IMG/VR virus record: IMGVR_UViG_3300044680_000280
Coordinates: 310,001-374,000 of that record
Length of the DNA: 64,000 bases
Direction: 5' to 3' (one strand)
The position numbers were made by a program, and so were the translations under genes. Positions 8,043 to 62,992 of the stretch are shown here, piece by piece (position 1 is the stretch's first letter; every line of letters starts with the position of its first letter). Below the pieces are notes generated by a model. The model had not been told where the DNA came from, made no database searches, and saw only the letters and a program-made list of their open reading frames with translations.

Positions 8043-8079
8043 GGTTGAACGTGGTTTCGATCTACGCTGTACTTCCGCC

Positions 8080-8283
8080 ATGGAAACCGTCGAACGTCTG
8101 ATGAAGGAGAACGAAGAGCTTCGGGCTCAGGTCAAAAAGCAACTCGTTTTGCTGAGGTCGGCAGAGTACGAGCTTTACAATGTGCGAGTACGGATGATAG
8201 CCGAAGACAAATACAAAGGCGACGCGTGGACCAGGCTCAACGCGCTACTTCATCTCATTCATGTGGCTACGGTCTCGACATGA
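8080..8283 (+). CDS. hypothetical coiled-coil protein
   Basis: B-promoter at 8045; ATG 8 nt after the TA of the -10 element. Confidence 0.7.
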   Translation: METVERLMKENEELRAQVKKQLVLLRSAEYELYNVRVRMIAEDKYKGDAWTRLNALLHLIHVATVST

Positions 8284-8528
8284 ACGGCAAGGCCCGACTC
8301 ATCGTTCACGGTGTGACAGTAGAGACTTGGACGAAGCGGTACGGCGTTTTACCGTTCAGTCATCCGTGCTCCGAGTGCGGCCGTATGTTGACGACCACGA
8401 TTCCGTTTGCTCAGGGCACGCTTCGCGGCCTGGCGGCTCCTCGCTGCGTTTGCGGAAATGAGGCAACCCCTTACGGTCTCGTTCGAGACTCGGCCTATGG
8501 AGACCTGTTTACGGGTCGGGAACGTTGA
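8280..8528 (+). CDS. small Zn-finger-like protein
   Basis: CSEC...CVCG; ATGA overlap. Confidence 0.6.
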   Translation: MNGKARLIVHGVTVETWTKRYGVLPFSHPCSECGRMLTTTIPFAQGTLRGLAAPRCVCGNEATPYGLVRDSAYGDLFTGRER

Positions 8529-9124
8529 TCGAAGTCGTACACGTCGAAACCGCCGAAGGTTGGGTACAAGGCGACGATCCGGATCTATCGGTCGGGCGGC
8601 GGGTGGTACCCCGGAGCGAGGAGAAGGAGAGGGTCGAAATTCGATCCTCTCTGGTCGGGCGTCGGTGTACCCTGATCGACATGAGCACACTTCTCGAGGA
8701 GCTGAGAAACGCCGGGTTTCAATACCACTCGAATCCGTTATTGGACCGAGCCGCGGATGAGATTGAACGGCTCACGAATGAGCTGGATGTGCTGATCGAT
8801 AACATTTGGCACGCGGGTAAGAACGAGTCAGACATCGTTGCCATCTCGAAGATCGTGGGGTACGAAGGGATCGGTAACCTCATTAGGATGGTCGAGGACC
8901 TCAAGAAGCGTGCCGACGAGGCCGAGAGTTACAAGGCGCAGGTCGAGGAACTTACGCAGAGGCTCGAAAGGGGGCGCATCCTCGAAGCTGCGGAGTCCGC
9001 GGTGACGTGCTTGTCGCACCGTACAGAGTGTCATGCAACGGGTTGCCTTTGCCATGACTGCCGGTCCTTCCGTTTTGCCACCCAGTTACTCGAATCCGTT
9101 AGAAGGGTTGACTCTAAAGATTGA
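8525..9124 (+). CDS. hypothetical coiled-coil protein (possible start 8681)
   Basis: LLDRAADEIERL phage-type motif, C-terminal Cys cluster. Confidence 0.6.
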   Translation: MIEVVHVETAEGWVQGDDPDLSVGRRVVPRSEEKERVEIRSSLVGRRCTLIDMSTLLEELRNAGFQYHSNPLLDRAADEIERLTNELDVLIDNIWHAGKNESDIVAISKIVGYEGIGNLIRMVEDLKKRADEAESYKAQVEELTQRLERGRILEAAESAVTCLSHRTECHATGCLCHDCRSFRFATQLLESVRRVDSKD

Positions 9125-9185
9125 TCCGTGAGCGGGTTGAACTCCGGCGAATCCCCGCTGTACTAGGAGGGAAGGAGTTACGACG

Positions 9186-9395
9186 ATGAAAGCCTACGGA
9201 CTCAATCGAATCGAAGATGGGGATGATGACGCGGTTGGCTGCGCCAGCAACGGGCGTGCCACCCACATTTACAGCGTCACTGGACGTTCGTACCGAAGCC
9301 TTCGAGGCGGCCGTAAGGATGCAGCTCGCCGTACCCACAAGCGCCGCGCCCGTGCCGAGGGCAAAAACATTACCCGCAACTGCGGCGAGGAATGA
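9186..9395 (+). CDS. small basic protein
   Basis: B-promoter at 9137 and SD. Confidence 0.65.
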   Translation: MKAYGLNRIEDGDDDAVGCASNGRATHIYSVTGRSYRSLRGGRKDAARRTHKRRARAEGKNITRNCGEE

Positions 9396-9408
9396 AAGGG
9401 AAACGACA

Positions 9409-9657
9409 ATGGTGATTGTTCAGACCGACTACCAATACAACGCTGAGGAATGGTGGGACGCGGCTAACGCACTGGCGAACAGCATGCGCGACCCGACGTT
9501 TACGCGCGTTTTCAATCTGATCACGCTGGCCGATGAGGTCAAAGTGGAGGAGAGCGACTTCGAGTCCTTCCTGTCGGCCGCTCGCAAGCTCGAGGGGTGG
9601 AGTGATGGCCCCGCAAAGGCCCCAAATCCGATTCTGTTTTCGTACGAGGAGAACTGA
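9409..9657 (+). CDS. hypothetical protein
   Basis: SD-like AAAGGG upstream. Confidence 0.65.
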   Translation: MVIVQTDYQYNAEEWWDAANALANSMRDPTFTRVFNLITLADEVKVEESDFESFLSAARKLEGWSDGPAKAPNPILFSYEEN

Positions 9658-9660
9658 CCG

Positions 9661-10308
9661 ATGAGTCAATGGAGGCTGTTCGAGAGTGGGTTTAACTACG
9701 ACACGATCGAGGCGGAGAGCGTCGAGGCGGCTCTCGAGGTCGCCAAGGACAATGTCGACCGAGACAATTACGAATCGTCCGACAAGACCTTCTACGTTGA
9801 CGTGCTTGTGCAGCGGGACCCGACGTTCGCGGTGTGGGGCCAGGGGGTGAGCAGTAGCGAGCTCATCCGCAACGGGAAGGCAACGGATCGAGCTCGTGCT
9901 CAGGCGGTCGAGCGCTCTGGCCCGATCGAGGGTGATAGGTGGGCGGTCGAGGTCACCTGCTCGAAAGATAAAATCGGCACCGAGGCTATACCCGACGAAG
10001 CGACCGAGTTTTACGCCGAGCTCGAGGGGGAGGAAGAGTCGTCGGCGTTAGTGGCCGTGGAGCCAGAGGAGCCCAAGTGCCCGAACGGGAAACACACGTG
10101 GGAGGAAACGAGCCTCCGTGGTAACGCGGGAGGAGTCATCATCAAGGAAACCTGTTCGACGTGCGGCTGTGTTCGCACGACGAACACGTGGGCTCAGAAC
10201 CCATCGACTGGTCAGCAGGGGCTGAGGTCGGTCGAGTACACCGTTTCGGACGACGACGATCAAGACCAGGTGGTCGACTACCCCGACAGTGCCGAGAGAG
10301 TCTATTGA
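9661..10308 (+). CDS. acidic hypothetical protein with C-terminal Zn-ribbon
   Basis: CPNGKHTW...CSTCG. Confidence 0.65.
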   Translation: MSQWRLFESGFNYDTIEAESVEAALEVAKDNVDRDNYESSDKTFYVDVLVQRDPTFAVWGQGVSSSELIRNGKATDRARAQAVERSGPIEGDRWAVEVTCSKDKIGTEAIPDEATEFYAELEGEEESSALVAVEPEEPKCPNGKHTWEETSLRGNAGGVIIKETCSTCGCVRTTNTWAQNPSTGQQGLRSVEYTVSDDDDQDQVVDYPDSAERVY

Positions 10309-10634
10309 GATCTGTTCAGCCGAAATGCTACCACGCATGCGGTCGCAAAGCCGCGGTTGGGCGACTTTTCTGCTCTACCAAATGTGCCGCAGAATGGGCT
10401 GAGGAACTCGCTCGCGGCAACGAAGACGAATGGTGTGTGCCTTGCCAGGCGTGGCAATCCGCTTCCGTGACGACCACAAACAAGCTCGGATGCGGGCATA
10501 TGCGGGTTGGTCTCCTCGAAGGCATGAAACATGCCGATGCGTCGAAAAAGTACGGGGACGCTATTGGGGGTCAGATAGCGCACTGGGGAGAGGAAAGATT
10601 CACCTCGGAAGAAACACGAAAGGACGAGCTATGA
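10305..10634 (+). CDS. Cys-rich hypothetical protein
   Basis: CGRK...FCSTKC; TTGA overlap. Confidence 0.55.
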   Translation: MRSVQPKCYHACGRKAAVGRLFCSTKCAAEWAEELARGNEDEWCVPCQAWQSASVTTTNKLGCGHMRVGLLEGMKHADASKKYGDAIGGQIAHWGEERFTSEETRKDEL

Positions 10635-10855
10635 TAATTTGGTCCGGAGGTCCACCGCCCGTGCATAAGGGCTCTGCGCCAGTCGATTCAAGACGAGAGA
10701 ACGGGTGGGAACCGATACCCCCGCCGCAGAAGTGCGACCTGTGCAATAAGCTGGCTCGGTACCAACACAAGGAGGGCGGGTTTCGGTGCGCGTCTTGCCC
10801 GTGTCCGCCCTCATCGAAATCTCGCCCTGACGGATGGCATTGCGTCGATGGGTAA
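10631..10855 (+). CDS. small Cys-rich protein
   Basis: ATGA overlap; CDLC...CASC. Confidence 0.55.
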   Translation: MIIWSGGPPPVHKGSAPVDSRRENGWEPIPPPQKCDLCNKLARYQHKEGGFRCASCPCPPSSKSRPDGWHCVDG

Positions 10856-10866
10856 GGGTTGACCAG

Positions 10867-11761: not shown

Positions 11762-11796
11762 TCGGTGTAAGGACAAGGTTGGAGGGTTTATTCCCC

Positions 11797-13182: not shown

Positions 13183-13185
13183 ACC

Positions 13186-23298: not shown

Positions 23299-23367
23299 GT
23301 GGGATGAATACACCGGCCCTGCTTCTCGGGCTTGAACTTTGTACGACCTTGCGGTGTAATCTGAGCC

Positions 23368-23673
23368 ATGGCAGGCACCAAGTCGAAAATGCTGCGGTTA
23401 CGCGCGGAAGCGATCAAGGACAGTTTGAACTTAGGCCTTGCTCAGTACGAGAGCTTTCTGAAGGAGAACTCTCGGATCCTGGCTTCACTGAAATGGCGAC
23501 GCCAAAACCCCGAGCTCGCTGAAAAGTACGAGAAAATCGCGGGAAACACATTTGATGCGCACAAAATGTGGCTTGCGGAGGTGAAGGTGGACCTCGCGCC
23601 GCTCGTTGCTCGTACCAAACAGAGACTTCAACTCGTGGACGAAATCCTCCAACGTTCCATATCCTCGTCGTGA
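23368..23673 (+). CDS. hypothetical helical protein
   Basis: B-promoter at 23332 and A-motif at 23352. Confidence 0.75.
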   Translation: MAGTKSKMLRLRAEAIKDSLNLGLAQYESFLKENSRILASLKWRRQNPELAEKYEKIAGNTFDAHKMWLAEVKVDLAPLVARTKQRLQLVDEILQRSISSS

Positions 23674-30717: not shown

Positions 30718-31059
30718 TTATCGCCGATGACAGAGATAACAGAAACCGCCCTTGCTGCGTTTATCCCCATGACGTTCGGATCTCTCACACTCTTCGAGAG
30801 AGTCGTACTTGTATTCTGGAAGAACGTCGTCGTCGCACAGATCGGGTGCCGCCTTTCGGACCCGTTTGACGACGAGAAGCCCGTTCCGTAAAACGGCACG
30901 TTCTTCGGTCTCCGCCTCGAACTCCTCGTCGATCATGGCCAGCGCCTCGACGTCACGATCGAGCTTGGCGAGCAGCTCTGGCTTCAGTGTGTCTCCAAGC
31001 TCCTGAAGGTCGAGTAACTCTTGGGGTGTGAGATAAATTTTGTGAATCGGGATTCGCAT
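30718..31059 (-). CDS. hypothetical protein
   Basis: B-promoter at 31100. Confidence 0.7.
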   Translation of the reverse strand: MRIPIHKIYLTPQELLDLQELGDTLKPELLAKLDRDVEALAMIDEEFEAETEERAVLRNGLLVVKRVRKAAPDLCDDDVLPEYKYDSLEECERSERHGDKRSKGGFCYLCHRR

Positions 31060-31101
31060 TTCCGTCTCTTGGATGGAGTACAGCGCGCACGATGGTGGAG
31101 T

Positions 31102-31425
31102 TCAAGCCGATTTTTTCTTGACCGCCTGGTTGATGTCCAGCAGGGCCCGACAGATCTGACAGACATCGCAGGTGCATGGGGACTCTGTCTTGTTCGCGTT
31201 AAGGCGTTCTCCTGCCAATCGGGCGCCTTTTCGCAGGATTCCCCGGATCTGTTTGAGCACCTTCTTCTTCTCGTTCAACTCGGCATGGATGACGTCCGTC
31301 TGCTCGTTGGTCGTCGTGAGCATCATGTCGAGCTCTTCAATACGGGTTTTCAGCCCGTCGTTTTCGGTGGTGAGTTTTTTGATCACCATCTTGTAGCCTC
31401 TCGAAATCAGATCTAGAGTGCTCAT
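31102..31425 (-). CDS. coiled-coil protein with CxCxxC
   Basis: A-motif at 31436. Confidence 0.7.
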   Translation of the reverse strand: MSTLDLISRGYKMVIKKLTTENDGLKTRIEELDMMLTTTNEQTDVIHAELNEKKKVLKQIRGILRKGARLAGERLNANKTESPCTCDVCQICRALLDINQAVKKKSA

Positions 31426-32236: not shown

Positions 32237-32293
32237 AGTCGGTTGAACCTTTCGACGTCTCGCGTTGTATTCTTCTCCAGAAGGGGAACGACA

Positions 32294-32488
32294 ATGACTC
32301 GAAGCATGGCGGTTCAGCTCGACAAAAAGGGCGACATTTACGTGGACAATTGGGAGGACGGTTTCGGGGTGTTCGGCACGGAATCGGGCTTCTGCTACGA
32401 GCTGTGCTCTGACAGGGGGACTGCTGAGGAGCAGGCAAAGAACCTCCGTGAGAAGCTCGGCATCGTTTCGTGGGGTCAGGATCTGTGA
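32294..32488 (+). CDS. hypothetical protein
   Basis: B-promoter at 32243 plus SD. Confidence 0.7.
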   Translation: MTRSMAVQLDKKGDIYVDNWEDGFGVFGTESGFCYELCSDRGTAEEQAKNLREKLGIVSWGQDL

Positions 32489-34156: not shown

Positions 34157-34367
34157 GCTCTGTTAATACACCGGGAGCCGTCGCTTCAGATGGTGTAAGA
34201 ATGGGGTATGCGCATCATCGGGCGGATCGGATACGCTGACCATCAAGATGCGAGAACCTCTCGGGGAGCTCTCGGACGAGCAGGTTGCGGCTCTTATGGC
34301 TCCGCGTACCGGTCAAGTGGGCGTTTCTGATTGAACCTTGATCCCTTCCGTGCTCTATTGACCTCCC

Positions 34368-34736
34368 ATGAGCAGCACACCCATTGAGATACCCGTTGCC
34401 ATTCGTAGGGTACGTTTCAATCCGTTACCCGGGGTATCTTTTCGCCTCACCATGTGGGAGACTCGCGAAAAGTCCCTCCTGGGGGGCAACACGATCAGTT
34501 ACCGTCTCATGATGCACGTGACGGGGCATCCGGCCGTTGAGCTCTTCAATGGAACCCAGTTCTCCGTACTCAAACACACTACGGAGTCGGATGAGGCTCT
34601 GAGCCTTCTAATGTTTTACCTTGTGTTCGCGAAAGAGGCGAACCCCGCTACTGCGAAACATCACCAGGAATTCGTCGAAAAATACGCCGTCACCCTTTGG
34701 TCCGAGGTAGAGGACCGATTTGGAGGACTCCCGTGA
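34368..34736 (+). CDS. hypothetical protein
   Basis: B-promoter at 34331. Confidence 0.7.
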   Translation: MSSTPIEIPVAIRRVRFNPLPGVSFRLTMWETREKSLLGGNTISYRLMMHVTGHPAVELFNGTQFSVLKHTTESDEALSLLMFYLVFAKEANPATAKHHQEFVEKYAVTLWSEVEDRFGGLP

Positions 34737-35511: not shown

Positions 35512-35621
35512 GTACGGATCTCTACTCTGGTGAGTGCAAGCATTCTTGTGCGTCAACCGGATAAGCATGGCTTGAACTTCTCGCTGGCCGGGCTGTACTC
35601 CCCCCAAGGAAGAAAAAACGA

Positions 35622-35852
35622 ATGATTACATTTGCAGCCGTGATGTCGTGCGACCATCCTGAATGTGAAACGAAGGTTGAAGTTAAACTTTACCTCAGGA
35701 TGAAGACTGGACGAGTCGGGTATGACGGAGGAGTGGGACGAGAAGTCCCAGAGCTGGGTTTTAATCACCCCTTAGGTTGGAGCGAGGAGCAGGACTGTTC
35801 CGGTCGGATGCGAAACTTTTGTAAGGAGCACGTCCAGGGGGAACGACGATGA
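35622..35852 (+). CDS. small Cys-containing protein
   Basis: B-promoter at 35572 plus AAGGA. Confidence 0.65.
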   Translation: MITFAAVMSCDHPECETKVEVKLYLRMKTGRVGYDGGVGREVPELGFNHPLGWSEEQDCSGRMRNFCKEHVQGERR

Positions 35853-36130: not shown

Positions 36131-36168
36131 AGGTTGAACTTCCCTCACTCCAGCGCTGTACTACTCCC

Positions 36169-36528
36169 ATGCTCACCAACTTTTCGATCGGTCGCCGCTA
36201 CCTTTGCACTCCAAAGGGTCGCGCCCACTTCTACTTCACGATCCTCGGTCCCGGGCCGAACTACGCGGACAAGCCGTCGAAGACGCACAAACTGTGCCGC
36301 ATCGACGTTCTCCCCGACCATCTCAACATGCCCGGCGGATCGTCCAACGGTTCCGTGGCGACCTACTCCCACTCACATTTGAAGAAATACGGGAAGCTCG
36401 TCGAGGTCAAGTCGCTCGAGGTGAAGCCTGGGGCCTTCTGTATGTACGCGGAGTATGTTACGCTCGAGGGTGAGACCGTCTCGATCAGTCTGGAGGGCGA
36501 GAACCGAGCCCCCGCGAGCCTCACATGA
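36169..36528 (+). CDS. hypothetical protein
   Basis: B-promoter at 36134. Confidence 0.7.
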   Translation: MLTNFSIGRRYLCTPKGRAHFYFTILGPGPNYADKPSKTHKLCRIDVLPDHLNMPGGSSNGSVATYSHSHLKKYGKLVEVKSLEVKPGAFCMYAEYVTLEGETVSISLEGENRAPASLT

Positions 36529-37311: not shown

Positions 37312-37794
37312 CTACTTCCGAAGGGCTAGCTTCGTTCCCGTGGCGACCGAGTTAACGAAGATCAAGTACCCGAGAGCGACGTACGGCATCGCGTGAAGAA
37401 TCTCGGGCATCGGGGTGATCAGGACGAGCTCGATGAGTGCGACGAAACCGAGCGCCTTTCGCTTGCAGAAAAACGCACGAGCCGTCCACTCGTAGACCGT
37501 CGGGGCGCTGAAAAGCAGGGCTCCCGCGACGATGACGAGGTAGGAGGCGAGGAGCGGCATCGGGGTCGTCGCCGTGATCGCCAGGTGGCTGATGCAGTAG
37601 GCAAACGACGGGACGACTGCTCCGAACGCCCCACCCATTAGGGTAGCAAGGCAGTTCTCCGGGCGGCACGCAACCTGAATCTGCTCGACCACACCCATCG
37701 CATTGATTTCGGTCTTCGACCGCTTCGCGCTGACCTTGCGGGCCGACTTCGGTGACTCTTCCTCGGGTCCAATGAGCTTCAGATTCGGGTTCAT
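37312..37794 (-). CDS. multi-pass membrane protein
   Basis: B-promoter at 37837, AAGGAG SD, four hydrophobic segments. Confidence 0.75.
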   Translation of the reverse strand: MNPNLKLIGPEEESPKSARKVSAKRSKTEINAMGVVEQIQVACRPENCLATLMGGAFGAVVPSFAYCISHLAITATTPMPLLASYLVIVAGALLFSAPTVYEWTARAFFCKRKALGFVALIELVLITPMPEILHAMPYVALGYLIFVNSVATGTKLALRK

Positions 37795-37878
37795 CGTTGT
37801 CTCCTTGGGAATGAGTACAACGCGACAAGTGGGAAGGTTCAAACCCCAAATGGAGTGAATCGGTGTATACGCCTATTC

Positions 37879-39794: not shown

Positions 39795-40346
39795 TTACAT
39801 CAAATCGGCGGGGTCGCCCGGCTCGGCGTCCGCCGGACCATCGAACTCAACCGAACCCTTGACGAGGTCCTTTTTGAACTGTCGCTTGAGGAACTTCTCG
39901 AGCGCGACCAGGAACTCGGGCGAGTTGGCGACATCCGAGACGTCCGCCGTCGCTGTAAATAGGACGTTCATCTTGTGGTAAAAAGGCTGCTTGTTCATGG
40001 TGTCAGTACGGCGTGGCGAGTGTGGGGGTTCAAGTGCTTCGTCCATGAGGTGGCTCCAAATGGTGCGACGCGGTCCGTTTGGAGCCACCTTGGGCTCCTC
40101 CTTCAGCTCTTCGACCAAAGACTGACGCTCATCCCGCTCTCGAATGATTCGTCGTAAGACGTCGACGGCGCCCCCATCCGGCCCATGTTCACCGACGTGT
40201 TGGACGAGTATTTGTAGCAGCTCCCCGTACGTGCCTGGAACCGCCATTGCTTCCCCATCCTGAAGCTGAGACAGGAGATCGGAAACGGCATCGAGCTCCC
40301 CTGGGAGCAGGTCACCGAGCAAGTCTCGTTGGAGGGTAAAAGGCAT
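39795..40346 (-). CDS. in-frame fusion of a W-tagged protein and a second gene (own start at 39998)
   Basis: A-motif at 40360; internal RRTIWSHLMDE; internal B-promoter at 40028 points to ATG 39998. Confidence 0.7.
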   Translation of the reverse strand: MPFTLQRDLLGDLLPGELDAVSDLLSQLQDGEAMAVPGTYGELLQILVQHVGEHGPDGGAVDVLRRIIRERDERQSLVEELKEEPKVAPNGPRRTIWSHLMDEALEPPHSPRRTDTMNKQPFYHKMNVLFTATADVSDVANSPEFLVALEKFLKRQFKKDLVKGSVEFDGPADAEPGDPADLM

Positions 40347-40520
40347 CGTCAGATTTACCTACACCGGATCTGGACTTACGGCCCGACGGGGGTTTCATCT
40401 TCCACTTGTCGATCGCGTTAGGGTATGATCCCCCTCGTGGCTCGCGTTGTGAGACGTGGTCGGAACTTTTAGGAACTGTTTTAAGTTGAACCCTAGGGGA
40501 GACCGCGCTGTACTCCCCCC

Positions 40521-40880
40521 ATGGAAGACCGGCTCATTCTAATCTCAGCCTTTTGGCGGAACGATTGCCCCGACGGAGTCGGCTGCACGTTCGAGTTCCA
40601 AGGGAACGATGGGGAAACGATGGCGAAGTTGATCGAGGATACCGTCAAGGTGTACGATCAGCACCCTGAGGTTCCCGTCGAGGAGTACGTTGAACAGTTG
40701 CGAGCGATTGGGCTGACCCCGATAGATCTCCGAGACGAGCAGATGCTGATGCTCGCGATGATCAACATCGCCTGGCTCGAGCGTCGCGGCCACATTCCGA
40801 CGGATGAGTTCAACGGAATGCTCTACGTGCGGTTGATCAAAGGTGAACCCACTCCGTCGAAGGTGCCCTTCACCAACTGA
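40521..40880 (+). CDS. hypothetical protein
   Basis: B-promoter at 40486. Confidence 0.75.
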   Translation: MEDRLILISAFWRNDCPDGVGCTFEFQGNDGETMAKLIEDTVKVYDQHPEVPVEEYVEQLRAIGLTPIDLRDEQMLMLAMINIAWLERRGHIPTDEFNGMLYVRLIKGEPTPSKVPFTN

Positions 40881-41633: not shown

Positions 41634-41981
41634 ATGAGCACCCAATTGCAAATGAATGCTCGGTATGCCGAGACCCGCATCGAAAACGCGAAGGGTCAGA
41701 CCATGGACGAGGTGGTCGAGGAGATGCGACAGAAGCACTGGGTGCCACTTCGCCGGGCTCTACTGCTGGAAGGTGTGACCCTAAGTCGCTACTGCGACTT
41801 TCTCAACGCTTGGCGAAAAGGGATCACGCGTTACATAACCCACGGTTGGCCGGAATTTTGCTACATTCGTCTGCAACCGGGGTCGATTTCGTCGCTGGCG
41901 CACCCGGATCAAGGTCGCGGGCTGACCGAGGTAGGGGTTGTAGACGAGGTTCATGCAGGAAATACAGCGAATGAGCTCTAG
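41634..41981 (+). CDS. hypothetical protein
   Basis: A-motif at 41616. Confidence 0.65.
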   Translation: MSTQLQMNARYAETRIENAKGQTMDEVVEEMRQKHWVPLRRALLLEGVTLSRYCDFLNAWRKGITRYITHGWPEFCYIRLQPGSISSLAHPDQGRGLTEVGVVDEVHAGNTANEL

Positions 41982-42026
41982 AAGTTCAAGAGTTGCGGGA
42001 AGCTAAAGTTTTCCGGAAACCCTACC

Positions 42027-42047: not shown

Positions 42048-42179
42048 GAGTCCTGGAAGGCCCCGAGACGGGTCGAGTCGTGACGGGACTCACTCGAGGT
42101 ACGCTGAGAACGGAGCGTTGAATTTTTCACTTGAACCCGGGTCGGGTTGTGGCTTTACTGTCAACACAAGGAGACAACG

Positions 42180-42443
42180 ATGAAGACTTTTCAGGTGGCA
42201 GATCGTGAACACATGGGCGGACACGTTGCGGTTCTCAAGCGGGTGGACAACGCCGAAGTTCAAGTGCCCCCGTCGAAGGGGTTCTACGTCCGGGCCATCC
42301 GAGCCGATGGTTCCCCCAGCACGATCGGCTTCTACTCCGACGAGCATACGGCCAACACCGAAATCTCGTTCCTGAAAGGGAACCGTATCCCGGACCCCAA
42401 GCTGGCGGACGCCGTCGACTTCGACATCGTTCCCGGCCGCTGA
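42180..42443 (+). CDS. hypothetical protein
   Basis: B-promoter at 42131, AAGGAG SD. Confidence 0.75.
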   Translation: MKTFQVADREHMGGHVAVLKRVDNAEVQVPPSKGFYVRAIRADGSPSTIGFYSDEHTANTEISFLKGNRIPDPKLADAVDFDIVPGR

Positions 42444-49394: not shown

Positions 49395-49607
49395 TCAGTC
49401 CTTGTCGTTGATGCGATAGAGGTTGATGTAGACGTTGTCCTTCCACGAGATCACGGCGCAAGGATCGAGTTGAATCGAGATTCCTTGCTCGTCTTCCCAA
49501 GCCGCACCGATTCGGTGAAAACGTTTCGCTTCTTTATCCCCTTTGTCTCCCGTCGGCTTGACCTTTACGGTCATGATGTAGTCCGGTTTTCTCGACGCGT
49601 TTGCCAT
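49395..49607 (-). CDS. small conserved protein, ssDNA-binding-like beta fold
   Basis: RIGAAW...GISIQLD; B-promoter at 49637. Confidence 0.65.
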   Translation of the reverse strand: MANASRKPDYIMTVKVKPTGDKGDKEAKRFHRIGAAWEDEQGISIQLDPCAVISWKDNVYINLYRINDKD

Positions 49608-49788
49608 GAGTCGAATACAACGCAGGTAGTCGAAAGGTTCAAGAGTACGTGGCTAGGAGATTTTGCACAGGAGCTTGTTGGCTCCGTACAAGCCAGAGTA
49701 GGTCTGTCTCGGCGTACCGAGCATTCGTTTGAAGTGTAAGGTCGATGCTTACACGAGCACTTCCCCGCCACACCCCGCGCAACGTTTG

Positions 49789-50094
49789 TCAGGCATCCGG
49801 ATTAGATACCTCAGACTTGAGTTTCGTCAAGAGTCGCTCGATTCCGAGGGCGATGTTGTCGTAAATGGGGCGCCTCATCGCTGGGTGCGGGGCGGTCCGA
49901 CCGTTTTTCCAACGTTCGAAACTCGACACGCTCAAACCGAACCGTACTCTGAGGACCTTCTCCTCGTCAAATACCCTCAGTTCTACCATCCGGTTGATAA
50001 GTTCTCGAAAAGTATCAGAGCTGTGCGTGGGGGCCGCCTTCAGATCCTCCATGAGTTTCGTGAGTTCTGCGATACGGTTGGACACGGTAAACAT
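49789..50094 (-). CDS. XRE-like helix-turn-helix protein
   Basis: FGLSVSSFERWKNGRTAPHPAMR. Confidence 0.7.
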   Translation of the reverse strand: MFTVSNRIAELTKLMEDLKAAPTHSSDTFRELINRMVELRVFDEEKVLRVRFGLSVSSFERWKNGRTAPHPAMRRPIYDNIALGIERLLTKLKSEVSNPDA

Positions 50095-50151
50095 TCTACT
50101 ACACCAAGATTCTCGATGAGTCAAGACCTCAGCCGGTGTAACCTGGGAACT

Positions 50152-50886
50152 ATGGGCAACCCGCAAGACCGCATCATTTTCGCTTTGGACCTTCCCACCT
50201 ACAAGGAAGCCGCCGGTTACGTTTCCGCTCTGCGGGAACACGTCGGCTGCTTCAAGGTGGGGCTCGAGCTTTTTATGGTTGATGGCCCTTTAATGGTTCA
50301 CCATATTCAACACGTACACAAAAGGTCGGTCATGCTCGACCTGAAGTTTCACGATATCCCTGAAACCGTTGCGCGAGCCCTCGTCCAGGCGGGGGATATG
50401 GGCGTGCGGTTCGCCACGATTCACGTGCAGCAAAGAGCAACGATGAAGAAGGCTGTCACGGTGGCAAAGCAGTACGGCATCCAACTCCTCGCCGTGACAG
50501 TTCTGACGTCGATGACGGACGATGACCTTTTCGACCTGGATATGTCGCCGCCGTTCCTTGGTTTTTTCCCCGGTGGAGTATCGAACCGTGTCGAACGTCT
50601 GGCAAAGCTTGCCTGGTCGGAGGGTGTCACGGGCTTCGTTTGCTCTCCCATGGAGGTGAAGCGGCTCCGTAACAGTTTGCCCAATGCTGTCCTCGTGACC
50701 CCAGGAGTGCGTCCCGCGGGTAGTGATGTCGGAGACCAAAAACGAATCGGGACGCCGTCTCAAGCTATTTCTGACGGAGCAAACTACATCGTCGTAGGTC
50801 GTCCGATTCGAGATGCCGCCGATCCTGTCGCCGCCGCGGCTCTGATCGCAAAAGAGATCGACTTCGACTTGGTGGACTCCCCTTGA
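50152..50886 (+). CDS. pyrF: orotidine 5'-phosphate decarboxylase
   Basis: IIFALD, FKVGLELF, MLDLKFHDIPETV, VTPGVRP and YIVVGRPI signatures; A-motif at 50134. Confidence 0.95.
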   Translation: MGNPQDRIIFALDLPTYKEAAGYVSALREHVGCFKVGLELFMVDGPLMVHHIQHVHKRSVMLDLKFHDIPETVARALVQAGDMGVRFATIHVQQRATMKKAVTVAKQYGIQLLAVTVLTSMTDDDLFDLDMSPPFLGFFPGGVSNRVERLAKLAWSEGVTGFVCSPMEVKRLRNSLPNAVLVTPGVRPAGSDVGDQKRIGTPSQAISDGANYIVVGRPIRDAADPVAAAALIAKEIDFDLVDSP

Positions 50887-51031: not shown

Positions 51032-51084
51032 GGTTGAACCGACCGCCCTTCCGTGTTGTACTCCCGTTAAAGGACGAGCGAACC

Positions 51085-51429
51085 GTGGCGAACAAGATCA
51101 AATGGGCGTGCCCCAGGTGCGGCGCTCCGGCAAACGAACACGGTAAGGGTGGTCACGACACATGCCACTCTCATAAGCGCGGTGCGGATCCCAACAACGC
51201 ATGCATGGGGTTCATCTGCGATTGCGACTGGGAGACCGGACCTGAGCACGGAGAATCCTACCAGGATCCGTGCGAGGAAGCTTACTGCTACCATTGCGGA
51301 TGGGGTGGCACGTTTCCCGAGAAGCCGAAGGGTCTCCAGTCGTGGGAAAAGAAAGCCCTTGATGCAGGGTGGACGATGCCCGAAGCTCGTATGGCAGAAC
51401 TCGGGCTCGCCACGGAAAAGAAGAAGTAA
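51085..51429 (+). CDS. Cys/His-rich Zn-binding protein
   Basis: B-promoter at 51034; CPRCG, CDC, CYHCG. Confidence 0.7.
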   Translation: MANKIKWACPRCGAPANEHGKGGHDTCHSHKRGADPNNACMGFICDCDWETGPEHGESYQDPCEEAYCYHCGWGGTFPEKPKGLQSWEKKALDAGWTMPEARMAELGLATEKKK

Positions 51430-54603: not shown

Positions 54604-54663
54604 GCTCCTTCTATTACACCGTTTGAACTTCGGGCAACCCCGGGTCGTACTGGAGAGGAACAC

Positions 54664-54861
54664 ATGGCCACCAAACCCGTCTTCCCGATTGGCGCCGCCG
54701 TCTACATCGATGGTCGCGATGCCGCGATCGTTCGAGCCGCCTTTCCCGAGGGCTCGTCATCTTTTCTGTTCCCGCACTACAAGGTGCACGTCATCGGCGG
54801 CGACAGAAACATGGCCGTTTCGATGTCCCGCGTTGGGGTGAAACGGAAGGAATCGGTGTAA
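54664..54861 (+). CDS. small SH3-like protein
   Basis: B-promoter at 54623, GAGG SD. Confidence 0.7.
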   Translation: MATKPVFPIGAAVYIDGRDAAIVRAAFPEGSSSFLFPHYKVHVIGGDRNMAVSMSRVGVKRKESV

Positions 54862-55947: not shown

Positions 55948-57309
55948 ATGCGAACCTCCTTCTGTGGGCGACTTCGAGACCGTGCTGAGGCCTTTTGGCA
56001 AAAGCACAAGAACTGGGAAGCCCCGCCGATCCCGAAGAACGTTCGACGAGTCGTGGGTGCGGTTCAAACTTTGCTCCCATTCCTGGCGGACAGGGAGGAC
56101 ACCCTTATCCAAAAGACGCTGAAGGGCATCTCTCTCGCTGAAGCCGTATACCGCATAGTGGAGGGGAACCGCCTGATTTCCGAGTATTCGGCGTACCTAG
56201 AACAGTGGGATTTGGTCCAGTCGTCAAACCGTAACCTTGCCCAACTGCTCTCTCAGTCGAAGATCTTGGAGATGCTTCCCTGCAATGAGATCCCGCTTTC
56301 CCACGGTGAGGCCAAATTCTGGGAGATTAATTCCGAGCAGGGGAAGTTTCTACTTGGAATTGGCGAGTACAACTCCAGCCTCGCTTATCCGGAGAATTTC
56401 GACGTACCAGGACTCCTGAACAGCCTCTGGAGCTGGTACGGGAACTGTATAACGATAAGTGTCCCTAAAAGGGGACACGGTAATCTGAGTTTGGAGTCCT
56501 TCCAAGAGCACCACGGGGAAATCCTCGGGAGCGCAAAGGCCACGTACGAACACTTCCTCTCGCAGCATCGCCGCTTTAAGGCGAATGGTAAGTCACGAAC
56601 TTACCTCTTCTACGGACCCCCCGGCACCGGAAAGAGCACCTTTTCTCGTAGACTGGCCTTGGAAACGAGCTCCCGCGTGCTCATCATCGACGCAACCTCC
56701 ATCTCTTTTTGGGGGTGCGACGAACTTCTCTACCTGCTATCAGCTCTTCAACCGGAGTTTGTTCTGCTGGACGACATTGATCGTGCTTCGAGTTCCATGT
56801 TTCTGCCGCTCCTCGAAAGGGTCAAACAAGAGGTGCCGGAAACGTCGTTCGTAATCACGGTCAACGATGTCTCGAAGCTCGACAAGGCACTGTTTCGACC
56901 CGGTCGGATCGATACCGTGCATGAATTTCTTTCTCCGGTGGAGGACGACCGCCGTGAAGTCATCTTGGGTTATCTCAAGCAGAGTCTTCAAATCGTGGAC
57001 AAGGAGACCCTGGAATTCCTAGTCAAAAGTACGGAAGGAATGTCTCAAGACTACCTCAGAGAGCTCGTTCTACGCCTCGACTACGAGGATGTGCCGAGCG
57101 CCCTCCTTTCTGTCATGAATCTGTGGAATCTTTCAGGCGGGAAATCTTCGAACAGCGCACCGGTTCCGGTCGGGTCTTCGTCAGAGCCAGAAGAGTCAGA
57201 GTCGGAGCCAAAGTCGGATAGACAACCACCGGTAAATATGACCAAAAGCACCGTTTCCTGGCGGTCTGTAAAAGATGGCTCAGTTTCGTCATACCCGATT
57301 GCCCGTTGA
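55948..57309 (+). CDS. AAA+ ATPase
   Basis: Walker A YGPPGTGKST, Walker B LLDDID, SRH ITVND...ALFRPGRID. Confidence 0.92.
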   Translation: MRTSFCGRLRDRAEAFWQKHKNWEAPPIPKNVRRVVGAVQTLLPFLADREDTLIQKTLKGISLAEAVYRIVEGNRLISEYSAYLEQWDLVQSSNRNLAQLLSQSKILEMLPCNEIPLSHGEAKFWEINSEQGKFLLGIGEYNSSLAYPENFDVPGLLNSLWSWYGNCITISVPKRGHGNLSLESFQEHHGEILGSAKATYEHFLSQHRRFKANGKSRTYLFYGPPGTGKSTFSRRLALETSSRVLIIDATSISFWGCDELLYLLSALQPEFVLLDDIDRASSSMFLPLLERVKQEVPETSFVITVNDVSKLDKALFRPGRIDTVHEFLSPVEDDRREVILGYLKQSLQIVDKETLEFLVKSTEGMSQDYLRELVLRLDYEDVPSALLSVMNLWNLSGGKSSNSAPVPVGSSSEPEESESEPKSDRQPPVNMTKSTVSWRSVKDGSVSSYPIAR

Positions 57310-60090: not shown

Positions 60091-60121
60091 ACTCTCCTCC
60101 ATACACCAACGGTTCTCCCGT

Positions 60122-60301: not shown

Positions 60302-60552
60302 TGGACGTCGTCCTCGACTCCGCCGCCGCCCATGAGCTGGGCCTCCAGGCAATCGTACACGCTCTCGGTGATGAGCATGCACCGCATCATTGCTCGATTG
60401 GACAGGGCCTGGGAGTGATACTTGCACGACGCGATCAGTCCTCCGGTAGAGGAGTAGAATACCGTCGGCTTGTTTACGCATACGAAGGGGTTATCGTTGT
60501 CAAGATTCGCCAGGAATAGTGAGGCGAACCCCATGCAGCAGATCCTAGCCAT
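60298..60552 (-). CDS. hypothetical Cys-containing protein
   Basis: TAATG overlap with pyrE. Confidence 0.6.
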   Translation of the reverse strand: MARICCMGFASLFLANLDNDNPFVCVNKPTVFYSSTGGLIASCKYHSQALSNRAMMRCMLITESVYDCLEAQLMGGGGVEDDVQ

Positions 60553-61163
60553 TAGCGAGAAAGGTCCGTGATGTGAAACAGACTTAGAACTCGGTAAATT
60601 CGGCCCCTCTCGGTGTCCTTCAATGGGACATCGAGGTTTGGGTATCTGCGCTCGACAACGGTCACGATTCCGACGACCAAGTATTGGTTGGAGTCCTCGA
60701 GTGCTCGGATGGCTTTAATGGAGGACCCGCCCGTTGTGACAACGTCCTCAACCAAAACGACTCTGTTTAGCCTACCCTCGACCGGAGCGGGACCCTCGAT
60801 GAGATTCTTCGTTCCGTGGTCTTTTGCTTCCTTGCGAACGTGAAGGACGTCCAGGGGGAGGTCCTCGAGTGCGGCTTGGAAGCCCACGAGGCTTGCCAGG
60901 TGGCACCCGCCGAGGGCAACGCCCGCCACGGCATCGAATTGACTAACACCGACGAGCTGAAGCACGTGTTGGTGTAGGACGTAGGCGAGGGTCCGTTGAA
61001 TCGAATGGTGCATCGACGACTTTTTGACGTCGATGTAAACGTCCGACTTCTCTCCAGAGGCGAGGGTGAAGGGCTCCCCCTCCGGTGCGATTCGAACGGA
61101 TCGCTCTTTCATGACATCTCTGATTCGATTCAAATGAGGACGGAGATTCTCTCGGATGCTCAT
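60552..61163 (-). CDS. pyrE: orotate phosphoribosyltransferase
   Basis: FTLASGEKSDVYIDVK, VRKEAKDHGT and the PRPP loop VVLVEDVVTTGGS. Confidence 0.93.
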   Translation of the reverse strand: MSIRENLRPHLNRIRDVMKERSVRIAPEGEPFTLASGEKSDVYIDVKKSSMHHSIQRTLAYVLHQHVLQLVGVSQFDAVAGVALGGCHLASLVGFQAALEDLPLDVLHVRKEAKDHGTKNLIEGPAPVEGRLNRVVLVEDVVTTGGSSIKAIRALEDSNQYLVVGIVTVVERRYPNLDVPLKDTERGRIYRVLSLFHITDLSR

Positions 61164-61633
61164 GTGTTCTCCTTCGCCATGCGGGTGCGGTAGCCCGGGA
61201 TGTAATCGTCGAGAATGATGGTGATGCCATCAACGTAGACGTCCCACTCCACTTTCTCGTCGCCCCAGCTCTCGCAGAGAGTGAGCTCATGCGTAACGGG
61301 GTAAGAGGTGTAGATCGAGTTCTTCCATGTGACGGCGAGGTAGTTGTATCTAAGTTGCTGGTTTTCCCCGACTCGAACTTCCGGTCGGTCGATTGCGTAC
61401 AGGTGAATCCCGACGCTTTCGAGAGTCACGTCATTCTGACCTTTTCCGACGTCCTCGGTTGGAGTCAGACGCTTCTGCCTTTTTCCTTCTTCGCTCGAGT
61501 GAAACCCATTGTGTCGACCCGCAAACACCCCGCACTCTTTGCGGCCCTGATCCGAATCGATCAGGACGGCGAGGGTCGTCTGGTACTGGTGGGGGTCGAT
61601 GACGAGCCGTCCCTGGGAGAAGTCGATGAGCAT
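61160..61633 (-). CDS. hypothetical protein
   Basis: TGGTGTA at 61644. Confidence 0.7.
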   Translation of the reverse strand: MLIDFSQGRLVIDPHQYQTTLAVLIDSDQGRKECGVFAGRHNGFHSSEEGKRQKRLTPTEDVGKGQNDVTLESVGIHLYAIDRPEVRVGENQQLRYNYLAVTWKNSIYTSYPVTHELTLCESWGDEKVEWDVYVDGITIILDDYIPGYRTRMAKENT

Positions 61634-61701
61634 GGGTGATTCTTACACCAGGTTCCGCGAAGGATGGTTGAACTTTCGGGCGGGTGTGTTGTATCTATTC
61701 C

Positions 61702-61896
61702 ATGTCTAAGCGCGGGTTTCGATTCTTCGATGATAGGGAATACATGCTCGTTCAGAAGCACACGGGAGAACTCTCTAAGGAAGCGGCCGATGAGCAGGCC
61801 GATCGTCTCCGTAAGGAGGGCTTCTTGGTGCGGGTCGTCAAGAGTGGCCGCTTTTCACACTCTGTCTACTCGCACCTACCGGACGACTCCCCGTAA
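61702..61896 (+). CDS. small hypothetical protein
   Basis: B-promoter at 61668. Confidence 0.7.
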   Translation: MSKRGFRFFDDREYMLVQKHTGELSKEAADEQADRLRKEGFLVRVVKSGRFSHSVYSHLPDDSP

Positions 61897-62157
61897 TTTC
61901 GCCACGGACGCGAGCAGGTCGGATGCGTCCTTGGTCTGCCTCGTCGGCGGACGGTCATCCTCATCGTCGTCCTCTGGTGGAGTCGGTTGAGCTTCGGGAG
62001 GTTTGGGGGTTACGGGTTGGACGGTGTGCTTGATGGGCTTTCCGACGATGAGCTTGGCGATGAAGTCGTCCCAGCTCATGTTGCCCTTCAGTTGACGGGC
62101 GGTCTCGTAGACCTCGTCGCTGAGCTGGGCTTTAATCCATCGGTAACCAGCGGCCAT
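61876..62157 (-). CDS. ribbon-helix-helix-like protein with acidic/Pro tail
   Basis: IKAQLSDEVYE...MSWDDFIAKLI; A-motif at 62173. Confidence 0.6.
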   Translation of the reverse strand: MAAGYRWIKAQLSDEVYETARQLKGNMSWDDFIAKLIVGKPIKHTVQPVTPKPPEAQPTPPEDDDEDDRPPTRQTKDASDLLASVAKLRGVVR

Positions 62158-62269
62158 GACTCATTCTGTTACTACACCGATCCTGGAAGACTCGGGCATT
62201 TAATCCCGGTGTAACTGGAAGTTCACTCTCCGATCCCGTCCTCGTCAAACTGACCAAGTAACGTAATGG

Positions 62270-62479
62270 GTGCGGCGCCGTCGACATCCACTTCGTCTCG
62301 TGTGGTTGTTGATTGTGCTTTGGTTTCGGAGCTGGCGGCTTCTCTGGAGGTGCCCCATCTGCTCGAAGGTCAGGCGCTGGGGAACCGAACACCCGCTCGA
62401 CACGTATCCGATGTTATGCGACATGTGGAACCAGCCGGAGTGCTGTCGTCGAGAGTTTCCTAAATGGGCGTACGCTTGA
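62270..62479 (+). CDS. small Trp/Arg-rich protein
   Basis: A-motif at 62207; RLVWLLIVLWFRSWRLLWRC. Confidence 0.5.
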   Translation: MRRRRHPLRLVWLLIVLWFRSWRLLWRCPICSKVRRWGTEHPLDTYPMLCDMWNQPECCRREFPKWAYA

Positions 62480-62510
62480 ACTTTCCGATGCTCCGCGCCG
62501 TACTCCCGCC

Positions 62511-62933
62511 ATGGGTCTCATCGAACGTTTAATGCGGGAATTCCAGGATCGAAAAGCTCGTTGGCAACCAATTCGAGCAGCCATCCTCGCCCTTTCTGCC
62601 GAAGAACGCCTACAGTTCCTCGCGGAAATGATCACTGAAATCGAGGACAAAACCCCTAAAGGCAGACAGCTTAACAGCCACGATCACCTGTTAGCCGGGC
62701 CCGGTGAGTACACGTTTGGAGCGTCCAGGTTCCGCCTCAGTCGCAAAGTTGCAAAGAGGGTGGATCGCATCGCCAATGCGCACGGCTTTTGTCTGATTGA
62801 GGTCTCGAACTTTCCTGGTGGCGTGGAGTACCAGCGGTGGTTTTCTGGTCCGAGTCGTGGCAGCCCCATCGATGAAGAGACTGAGGTTGCCATTCTATCC
62901 GACATCGAGAAGGATGGGATCCCCTTGTGGTGA
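62511..62933 (+). CDS. hypothetical protein
   Basis: ORF. Confidence 0.65.
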   Translation: MGLIERLMREFQDRKARWQPIRAAILALSAEERLQFLAEMITEIEDKTPKGRQLNSHDHLLAGPGEYTFGASRFRLSRKVAKRVDRIANAHGFCLIEVSNFPGGVEYQRWFSGPSRGSPIDEETEVAILSDIEKDGIPLW

Positions 62934-62992
62934 CACTCGACGTTTGAACTTTCGGCTACACCACGCCGTACTTTCATGAGACAGGAACTTCA

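What the first reader, a model, noticed from the sequence alone, without database searches (positions are those of the whole stretch)
8045..62974. Second promoter class TTGAAC-N16/17-YGTA(C/T)T with ECF-sigma geometry
About 18 copies with tightly fixed spacing, for example TTGAACCTTTCGACGTCTCGCGTTGTATT (32243) and TTGAACCTTTCGACTACCTGCGTTGTATT (49637, minus). The -10 shares the GTA core with the A-motif, but CGG is replaced by CGC/CGT/GCC. Some drive leaderless starts 8 nt downstream (8080, 36169, 39998, 40521, 49607). Others have leaders with a strong SD, and AAGGAGACAACGATG is shared by 37794 and 42180. Established: B. subtilis sigma-W recognises TGAAAC-N16-CGTA. Inference: two temporal classes, or a host ECF sigma versus a phage sigma.
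Basis: partly seen in the sequence, partly recalled or inferred. Interest (0 to 1): 0.62.

Follow-up and report, generated by a model that had tools for sequence, protein, structure and literature searches.

The report
Phage sigma-type leaderless promoter class
The repeated TTGAAC-N16/17-YGTAYT sites are real promoters in the small-gene arm of a roughly 460-kb peat phage, many placed so that the mRNA starts at the ATG. They are most likely read by a fast-evolving sigma factor that the phage itself encodes, not by a host stress sigma.

Summary
The window has 15 exact TTGAAC-N16/17-YGTAYT sites against 0.03 expected, plus 4 one-letter variants. The 406.7-kb virus record has 29 exact sites (about 36 by weight matrix). 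All lie at 272-406 kb, nearly all in intergenic gaps. All 36 have a start codon 5-22 nt downstream: 19 within 5-8 nt (no leader), the rest at 12-22 nt, mostly behind a Shine-Dalgarno.

Four related huge phages lack this exact motif. Each has its own version of the same design: TTGATT/TGTAGT, GTTGATC/TGTAGG, GTTGAAr/CGTTGT and TTGAWT/TGTTCY. All share the core TTGA...YGT at -12..-10, then 6 nt and ATG, which is ECF-like geometry. The A motif (CGGTGTA-N10/11-ATG) is identical in every relative.

The phages encode no RNA polymerase. They do encode a divergent sigma (375 aa, outside the window) whose sigma-2 domain is split by an insertion. It diverges quickly (26-50% identity), as the B motif does. 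In two relatives its gene sits directly behind that phage's own B promoter.

Candidate host genomes (Polyangiaceae, inferred from NadA) carry the motif only at chance level. No RNA data exist, so start sites, timing and the sigma assignment remain inferences.

The parts
8045..8073 (+). B promoter: TTGAAC-N17-TGTACT. ATG at 8080, 6 nt after the hexamer (leaderless), 67-aa ORF.
9137..9164 (+). B promoter: TTGAAC-N16-TGTACT. ATG at 9186, 21 nt downstream behind AGGAGG/AAGGAG.
23332..23360 (+). B variant: TTGAAC-N17-TGTAAT. ATG at 23368, 7 nt downstream (leaderless). Back to back with a minus-strand A promoter.
31077..31105 (-). B promoter: TTGAAC-N17-TGTACT. ATG at 31059, 17 nt downstream.
32243..32271 (+). 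B promoter: TTGAAC-N17-TGTATT. ATG at 32294, 22 nt downstream behind GAAGGGGA.
34331..34359 (+). B variant: TTGAAC-N17-TCTATT. ATG at 34368, 8 nt downstream.
35572..35599 (+). B promoter: TTGAAC-N16-TGTACT. ATG at 35622, 22 nt downstream behind AAGGAAG.
36134..36162 (+). B promoter: TTGAAC-N17-TGTACT. Leaderless ATG at 36169, 119-aa ORF.
37814..37842 (-). B promoter: TTGAAC-N17-TGTACT. ATG at 37794 behind AAGGAGACAACG. Divergent from the A promoter at 37861 (+).
40005..40033 (-). B promoter: TTGAAC-N17-CGTACT. Leaderless ATG at 39998.
40486..40514 (+). B promoter: TTGAAC-N17-TGTACT. Leaderless ATG at 40521, 119-aa ORF.
41961..41989 (-). B promoter: TTGAAC-N17-TGTATT. Leaderless ATG at 41954.
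42131..42159 (+). Weak B variant: TTGAAC-N17-TTTACT, matrix score 14.3, which is below the best shuffled score. ATG at 42180 behind AAGGAGACAACG.
49614..49642 (-). B promoter: TTGAAC-N17-TGTATT. Leaderless ATG at 49607.
51034..51062 (+). B promoter: TTGAAC-N17-TGTACT. GTG at 51085, 22 nt downstream behind AAAGGACGAG.
54623..54651 (+). B promoter: TTGAAC-N17-CGTACT. ATG at 54664, 12 nt downstream behind GGAGAGG. Abuts the minus-strand A promoter ending at 54621.
61668..61695 (+). B variant: TTGAAC-N16-TGTATC. Leaderless ATG at 61702. Divergent from the A promoter at 61650 (-).
62476..62504 (+). B promoter: TTGAAC-N17-CGTACT. Leaderless ATG at 62511, 140-aa ORF.
62944..62972 (+). B promoter: TTGAAC-N17-CGTACT. 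ATG at 62993, 20 nt downstream.

Best explanation
The sites are bipartite promoters of the sigma-70 family type with ECF-like geometry. The extended consensus is G-n-TTGAAC-YYY...CCGCG-Y-TGTACT. The hexamers sit at about -35..-30 and -12..-7, counting the A of the ATG as +1.

They head about 36 transcription units of small ORFan genes in one arm (272-406 kb) of a huge phage. About half are placed so that the transcript begins at the A of the ATG (leaderless mRNA). The rest give 5-16 nt leaders that start with a Shine-Dalgarno.

The phage has no RNA polymerase of its own. I infer that host core RNA polymerase is directed to these sites by a phage-encoded divergent sigma, P0001. It is 375 aa, lies at record positions 251198-252322 on the minus strand (outside the window), and its sigma-2 domain is split by an insertion. 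It may act together with a conserved sigma-4-bearing protein, p212.

Sigma and promoter appear to co-evolve. Each related phage keeps the design (TTGA..., N15-17, YGT..., 6 nt, ATG) but uses its own letters.

Shown: the motif, its spacing, its position, its clade-wide variants, and the presence of the sigma-like gene. Inferred: the start site, which protein reads the motif, and the timing.
For: - Motif statistics: 15 matches against 0.03 expected in the window. There are 29 exact matches in the record, all at 272-406 kb. The spacer is 17 nt (21 sites) or 16 nt (8 sites).
- An invariant G lies 2 nt upstream of the hexamer, and a pyrimidine-rich tract follows the -35.
- Position: 31 of 36 sites lie wholly in intergenic gaps. 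All 36 have a start codon with an ORF of at least 57 aa 5-22 nt downstream. Nineteen of those starts are 5-8 nt away.
- The 36 first-gene products share no paralogy, so the motif is conserved in its own right.
- Canonical sigma-70 promoters are not enriched.
- Pfam finds no RNA polymerase beta, beta' or T7-type polymerase.
- Relatives lack the exact motif. Each has its own version as the top bipartite word pair, or as a clear leaderless set: G001 16 copies, G004 71, G018 30, G019 50, G002 38, G003 19.
- P0001 as a sigma: Pfam Sigma70_r2 at E=7e-4. About 23 of the top 27 structural matches are sigma factors, aligned over their sigma-2 regions; SigB gives Z 7.6, rmsd 2.7 A over 87 residues. Four of 16 database relatives carry PF04542, and one is named a sigma-24 family protein.
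- Rates of change: P0001 orthologues are 26-50% identical, against 67-80% for p212.
- The sigma gene lies directly behind its phage's own B promoter in G004 (leaderless) and G002 (20-nt leader).
- A sigma-70-like TTGACA-N18-TAAnnC lies upstream of the sigma gene in G002 and G003, which suggests a cascade started by the host sigma.
- G001 and contig L286 share the TTGATT/TGTAG motif, and their sigmas have similar C-terminal helices.
- Published ECF promoter features match: AAC in the -35, CGT in the -10, 14-17 nt spacers, near-consensus sites and autoregulation (PMC5758882).
Against: - No transcript data exist for this phage, so no start site is mapped.
- In the window's own phage the sigma gene has no B promoter upstream.
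- The Pfam sigma-2 hit is below the curated cut-off. Structural Z values of 5-8 are in the grey zone for helical folds. Foldseek and PDB sequence searches gave nothing significant.
- A sigma-4 domain in P0001 is not demonstrated. Profile comparison with the genuine sigma-4 of p212 gives no match.
- The sigma/promoter co-variation rests on only 5-6 lineages.
- The true host is unknown, so a host alternative sigma cannot be excluded.
Confidence: 0.55

Rival explanations
1. The sites are read by a host alternative (ECF-type) sigma. The phage borrows a stress sigma that infection activates, and relatives differ because they infect hosts whose ECF sigmas have different specificities.
For: - In this phage the motif (TGAAC-N17/18-GTA) fits the published ECF pattern, including the T-rich tract after the -35.
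- The likely hosts are Polyangiaceae, inferred from NadA at 73% identity. From my own knowledge, myxobacteria carry very many ECF sigmas.
- The window phage's sigma-like gene has no B promoter of its own.
Against: - Five Polyangiaceae genomes carry the motif only at control level (10 hits against 9 for the control). All 10 hits lie inside open frames of 330-800 codons.
- In relatives the -35 lacks AAC (TTGATT, TTGATC).
- G004 has about 70-100 such promoters spread across its genome. That would make nearly its whole programme depend on a normally sequestered sigma.
- The phages encode their own sigma-2 protein, which sits behind a B promoter in two lineages.
Confidence: 0.2
2. The sites are read by the host housekeeping sigma, either as unusual early promoters or after remodelling by a phage sigma-4 protein (p212, or the G000-specific p379). 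This would be analogous to sigma appropriation.
For: - The invariant -35 core GTTGA resembles TTGACA, and the hexamer spacing is 16-17 nt.
- p212 carries a high-confidence sigma-4 domain (Pfam E=2e-15; structural Z 8-8.8) and a second HTH. Both recognition helices are invariant across the clade.
- p379 occurs only in this phage, as does TTGAAC.
Against: - All 29 exact sites, and all but two of the 36 matrix sites, have G where housekeeping sigmas need A at -11. The need for A at that position is from my own knowledge.
- Re-aligning on TA would give a 19-nt spacer and only 4 nt to the ATG.
- Relatives without p379 still have B-type promoters.
- Canonical sigma-70 sites are not enriched in the phage.
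Confidence: 0.15
3. The sites are not promoters. They could be operator sites for a repressor or some other DNA-binding signal that happens to lie upstream of genes.
For: No direct transcript evidence exists.
Against: - The motif is bipartite with a fixed 16/17-nt spacer and strict orientation towards the downstream gene.
- The ATG lies exactly 6 nt after the second hexamer at 15 sites.
- The spacer sequence is not conserved.
Confidence: 0.03

Closest known systems
ECF (group 4) sigma promoters, e.g. B. subtilis sigma-W TGAAAC-N16-CGTA (PMC5758882)
   Same: - AAC in the -35 (in this phage) and a T/C-rich tract just after it.
- A 15-17 nt spacer and a YGT core in the -10.
- Sites very close to consensus.
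- In two relatives the sigma gene lies behind its own promoter type.
   Different: - The clade-wide invariant -35 core is GTTGA, and relatives have TTGATT or TTGATC without AAC.
- The -10 block extends to G-Y-TGTAYT.
- The promoters serve dozens to about 100 phage genes, not a small stress regulon.
- Most produce leaderless or very short-leader mRNAs.
Phage-encoded sigma cascades: SPO1 gp28 then gp33/34, T4 gp55/gp33, and sigma factors of jumbo phages that lack an RNA polymerase (PMC7824862). The SPO1 and T4 details are from my own knowledge.
   Same: - No phage RNA polymerase.
- A phage sigma-like protein redirects host core polymerase to phage-specific promoter classes.
- A possible division of labour between a sigma-2-bearing protein and a sigma-4-bearing protein.
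   Different: - The sigma-2 domain is interrupted by an insertion of about 75 aa, larger and Zn-ribbon-like in G002 and G003.
- The promoters have a strong -35 element, unlike T4 late promoters.
- There is extensive leaderless design.
- None of this is shown biochemically.
T7-group RNA polymerase and promoter co-variation (own knowledge)
   Same: Closely related phages keep the promoter architecture but change specificity letters together with a fast-evolving recognition protein.
   Different: Here the recognition protein is a sigma subunit for the host core enzyme, not a single-subunit polymerase.
Leaderless mRNA promoters of Actinobacteria and Deinococcus, with a -10 6-7 nt before the ATG (PMC3160421, PMC3898074 listed; details from my own knowledge)
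   Same: The start codon sits at a fixed 6-7 nt from the -10 element and there is no Shine-Dalgarno.
   Different: The -10 is TGTACT, not TANNNT. The putative host is a myxobacterium, where leaderless mRNAs are only sporadically reported.

Membership tests
Bipartite sigma-70-family promoter | Two conserved elements at a fixed spacing of about 16-18 nt | tested here: met
   Spacer is 17 nt at 21 sites and 16 nt at 8 sites, with 0-3 sites at any other spacer from 12 to 22.
Bipartite sigma-70-family promoter | Intergenic position, oriented towards a downstream gene | tested here: met
   31 of 36 sites are wholly intergenic. All 36 have a start codon 5-22 nt downstream on the same strand.
Bipartite sigma-70-family promoter | Transcription starts 6-8 nt after the -10 element | not testable with these tools
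   No RNA runs hold this sequence. The start is inferred only from an ATG exactly 6-7 nt downstream at 15 of the 29 exact sites.
Housekeeping sigma-A/sigma-70 promoter (TTGACA-N17-TATAAT) | A at position 2 and T at position 6 of the -10 hexamer | tested here: not met
   Position 2 is G in 29 of 29 exact sites, and position 6 is T. The canonical scan finds 3 sites against 5.3 expected.
ECF-type promoter | AAC in the -35 element | tested here: inconclusive
   Met in this phage (TTGAAC). Not met in the homologous promoter classes of G001 and G004 (TTGATT, TTGATC).
ECF-type promoter | CGT/GT-type -10 core, 14-17 nt spacer, near-consensus sites | tested here: met
   YGT lies at -12..-10 in all five lineages when aligned on the ATG, with spacers of 15-17 nt. 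Criteria are from PMC5758882.
ECF-type promoter | The cognate sigma gene is autoregulated from the same promoter type | tested here: inconclusive
   A B-type promoter lies directly upstream of the sigma gene in G004 and G002. None does in G000, G001 or G003.
Sigma-70 family protein, ECF-like (P0001) | Sigma-2 domain | tested here: inconclusive
   Pfam Sigma70_r2 scores E=7e-4 at 19.7 bits, below the 24-bit cut-off. About 23 of the top 27 VIA matches are sigma factors aligned over their sigma-2 regions, with Z 5.4-7.6. Four family members carry PF04542. Foldseek and the PDB sequence search are not significant.
Sigma-70 family protein, ECF-like (P0001) | Sigma-4 domain that binds the -35 element | tested here: inconclusive
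   A C-terminal four-helix region with an HTH-like pattern is present. There is no Pfam r4 hit, and hhalign against the p212 sigma-4 profile gives no match.
Sigma-70 family protein, ECF-like (P0001) | Binds core RNA polymerase and directs initiation at the cognate promoter | not testable with these tools
   This needs in vitro transcription.
Leaderless mRNA | The 5' end of the transcript coincides with the start codon, with no Shine-Dalgarno | tested here: inconclusive
   The ATG lies 6-7 nt after the -10 at 15 of the 29 exact sites (19 of 36 within 5-8 nt), with C at -1 and no Shine-Dalgarno. No 5'-end data exist.

The most novel reading that the evidence does not exclude
A clade of 350-460-kb phages, probably infecting Polyangiales myxobacteria, may run almost its whole gene-expression programme through two dedicated promoter classes that mostly yield leaderless mRNAs.

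Class A (CGGTGTA-N10/11-ATG) is frozen across the clade, as are the DNA-reading helices of a protein with two sigma-4-like domains.

Class B is read by a sigma whose sigma-2 domain is split by an inserted DNA-binding-like module. This sigma co-evolves with its promoters so fast that each lineage has a private sigma/promoter pair. Together they would form a natural set of mutually orthogonal sigma-promoter pairs.
Probability: 0.4. Interest if true: 0.72.

Novelty: new variant of a known kind. Interest (0 to 1): 0.6.

Why it matters
Huge phages known only from metagenomes have almost no described transcription logic. This work gives two complete promoter classes, a candidate sigma, and five lineage-specific sigma/promoter pairs.

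The prediction can be tested with purified proteins and no cultured host. The pairs are also candidate orthogonal expression parts.

More than 130 genes in one phage have a leaderless design. That is unusual outside Actinobacteria, Deinococcus and archaea, and it bears on how such phages take over translation.

Tried and rejected
- An exact-pattern scan of IMG/VR for the leaderless form of the motif gave 80 single hits consistent with chance and no multi-hit contig.
- Megablast of 12 kb against the phage records found no match.
- Sequencing-run search found only peat DNA runs and no RNA.
- A peptide-word search for P0001 in IMG/VR found nothing. Orthologues came from searching the relatives' records directly.
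- The PDB sequence-profile search and Foldseek for P0001 were not significant.
- hhalign of the P0001 family against the p212 family showed no similarity.
- The motif in five Polyangiaceae genomes was at control level and lay inside coding frames.
- The excess of TTGA-N15 and TTGA-N21-TGTA pairs is probably a 3-nt coding periodicity artefact; most of these pairs lie on the plus strand, opposite the long minus-strand gene arm. It is not a further class.
- Pfam on ten B-driven genes gave no hits.
- Terminator-like hairpins are not enriched.
Full report
**What the window is.** The window is positions 310001-374000 of a 406,734-bp IMG/VR virus record with 55% G+C. A 463,523-bp JGI contig carries the same genes, and a Logan contig joins the record's right end to its left end. 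The real genome is therefore about 463 kb and circularly permuted, and the 'provirus' label looks like a trimming artefact. The source is a peat metagenome with no RNA runs. A crude gene call shows long minus-strand operons of large genes at 0-230 kb. From 230 to 406 kb there are many small genes on both strands.

**Observation.** The exact pattern TTGAAC-N16/17-YGTAYT occurs 15 times in the window against 0.03 expected. It occurs 29 times in the record, and every copy lies between 271.9 and 406 kb. Spacers of 17 nt (21 sites) and 16 nt (8 sites) dominate, and other spacers give 0-3 sites.

There is a G two bases before the -35 and a pyrimidine-rich triplet after it. The run CCGCG-Y precedes TGTACT, with its last G (2 nt before the hexamer) present in 28 of 29 sites. 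CC precedes the start codon.

A weight matrix trained on the 29 sites finds about 36 sites above the best shuffled score. In the window these add 23332, 34331 and 61668, and there is a weaker site at 42131.

**Position and function.**
- 31 of 36 sites lie wholly between predicted genes, and the others overlap a gene end by a few bases.
- All 36 have a start codon heading an ORF of at least 57 codons 5-22 nt downstream.
- Among the 29 exact sites, 14 have the start codon exactly 6 nt after the hexamer and one at 7 nt.
- The remaining sites have starts at 12-22 nt, usually behind AGGAG-like sequences that begin about where transcription would start.
- The products of the 36 first genes are not paralogous, so the motif is not carried along by duplication.
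- Ten of these products have no Pfam match.

If the A of the ATG is +1, the hexamers occupy -35..-30 and -12..-7. That is classical sigma-70-family geometry, but with G where housekeeping sigmas need A at -11.

**The A motif.** GGTGTA is enriched 10-fold upstream of genes. CGGTGTA-N10/11-ATG occurs 87 times in the record, across the whole genome, with no clear -35. The copies are often in back-to-back divergent pairs, or paired with a B site. Its GTA lies 10-11 nt from the ATG, against 8 nt in class B, so the two classes are not in register.

**Relatives.** A conserved 212-aa protein with sigma region 4 (p212) led to about 20 related huge-phage contigs.

None of five relatives has the exact B motif, while all have the A motif (17-32 copies in three relatives and 7 in the 60%-complete G003, against 0-1 for controls). 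Each relative nevertheless has its own bipartite class with the same design:

| Phage | -35 | Spacer | -10 | Copies |
|---|---|---|---|---|
| G000 (this record) | TTGAAC | N17/16 | YGTAYT | 29 |
| G001 | GGTTGATTC | N16 (hexamer to hexamer) | GGGTTGTAGT | 16 |
| G004, G018, G019 | GTTGATC | N16 | TGTAGG | 71, 30, 50 |
| G002 (complete, 407 kb) | GTTGAAr | N15/16 | CGTTGT | 38 |
| G003 | TTGAWT | N15/16 | TGTTCY | 19 |

Most copies have an ATG 6 nt after the -10 hexamer. Aligned on the ATG, the shared core is TTGA in the -35 and YGT at -12..-10. This is the CGT/GT type of -10 described for ECF sigmas, with spacers of 14-17 nt and near-consensus sites (PMC5758882).

**Who reads it.**
- Pfam finds no RNA polymerase subunits or T7-type polymerase in the record.
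- The sigma region 4 model hits p212, which has two HTH modules. The first has structural matches that are all sigma-4 domains, with Z 8-8.8. It also hits a 379-aa protein found only in this phage.
- A weak region 2 hit in G002 led to a family present in all of the larger relatives. The G000 member, P0001, is 375 aa.
- P0001 has a DIVQEIFLQL-type 2.1-2.2 segment, an insertion of about 75 aa, a region 2.3-2.4-like segment and a C-terminal helical HTH-like part.
- Support for a sigma-2 domain: Pfam Sigma70_r2 at E=7e-4, which is sub-threshold. About 23 of the top 27 structural matches are sigma factors, aligned over their sigma-2 regions, among them SigB, SigI, sigma-28, RpoE, AlgU, SigW, SigK and SigH. 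Four of 16 database relatives carry PF04542, and one is named a sigma-24 protein.
- The sigma-4 assignment for the C-terminus is not confirmed.

**Link between P0001 and class B.**
1. P0001 orthologues diverge quickly (46-50%, 30%, 29% and 26% identity), as the B motif does. p212 is 67-80% identical with invariant recognition helices, as the A motif is invariant.
2. In G004 the sigma gene starts 6 nt after a perfect local B promoter. In G002 it lies 20 nt after one.
3. G002 and G003 share a sigma-70-like TTGACA-N18-TAAnnC upstream of the sigma gene. This suggests the host sigma starts a cascade.
4. G001 and an independent contig, L286, share both the TTGATT/TGTAG motif and similar C-terminal helices in their sigmas.

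Against this, the G000 sigma gene has no B promoter, and the number of lineages is small.

**Host sigma alternatives.** The phage NadA is 73% identical to Polyangiaceae proteins, and all 80 best hits are labelled Myxococcota, delta-proteobacterial or Proteobacteria MAGs. The host is therefore probably a myxobacterium. Five such genomes carry the motif at control level (10 hits against 9), and all hits lie inside long open frames. This is weak evidence, because the true host is unknown and regulons are small. Housekeeping sigma recognition is unlikely because of G at -11. Canonical sigma-70 promoters are not enriched in the phage.

**Verdict.** The motif is a real promoter class. Its geometry is ECF-like and it largely produces leaderless mRNAs. 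It is one lineage's version of a clade-wide, rapidly diversifying class. The phage's own sigma is the best candidate reader (about 0.55). A host alternative sigma (0.2) and a remodelled housekeeping sigma (0.15) remain open.

Phage sigma cascades are well known (PMC7824862). What is new here:
- the sigma-2 domain split by an insertion
- the lineage-private promoter letters
- the scale of the leaderless design

Timing was not testable.

Noticed in passing
window, about 52 sites, e.g. 13615(-)/13628(+), 31442(-)/31490(+), 43351(-)/43397(+): The A-class promoter (C/T)GGTGTA-N10/11-ATG is far more numerous than class B, with 87 exact copies in the record. It spans the whole genome, often as back-to-back divergent pairs, and is letter-identical in four relatives tested. 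Its reader is unknown. p212 has invariant DNA-reading helices and is a candidate.
   Followed up: partly
record G000 187895-188530 (-), locus L002:1171-1809: A 212-aa protein has a genuine sigma-4 domain (residues 46-110) followed by a second LuxR/sigma-4-like HTH (119-189), and no sigma-2. It lies next to a 5'-3' exonuclease gene and is 67-80% conserved across the clade. A further small r4-like ORF follows at 187532-187723.
   Followed up: partly
record G000 395786-396922 (-), locus L001:1408-2547: A 379-aa protein with a C-terminal sigma region 4 was found only in this phage among the five compared. It is followed by a 373-aa protein with a sub-threshold DnaJ J-domain hit.
   Followed up: partly
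loci L283, L284, L285: The IMG/VR 'provirus' record is a trimmed piece. The same genes lie on a 463,523-bp JGI contig, and a Logan contig joins the record's end to its start. The genome is therefore about 463 kb and circularly permuted. The trimmed part carries more phage-like small genes (GmrSD_N, NADAR, FGE-sulfatase).
   Followed up: partly
locus L003:1420-2433 (record about 398.1-399.1 kb): A phage-borne quinolinate synthase NadA is 73% identical to Polyangiaceae proteins, and all 80 best hits are labelled Myxococcota, delta-proteobacterial or Proteobacteria MAGs. It is the only host clue obtained.
   Followed up: partly
window 49729-50886 (+), 498-1289 (+), 55948-57309 (+): Auxiliary-type genes lie in the small-gene arm. 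One is an OMP decarboxylase domain behind a 147-aa N-terminal extension. The others are a HAD-family hydrolase and an AAA ATPase.
   Followed up: no
loci L260:838-1998 and L261:562-1866 (G002, G003): In these two relatives the insertion that splits the sigma-2 domain is much larger and carries Cys-x2-Cys pairs (Zn-ribbon or HNH-like).
   Followed up: no
G002 58510 (+), G003 209794 (-), L286 and L287 about 95 nt upstream of the sigma gene: A conserved sigma-70-like TTGACA, with N18 then TAAnnC in G002 and G003, lies upstream of the phage sigma gene. It is a possible host-sigma entry point of the cascade.
   Followed up: partly
record G000 405965 (+), locus L283:10695-11396: The last B promoter drives a gene with a GmrSD_N (DNA-modification-dependent nuclease, N-terminal) domain.
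   Followed up: no
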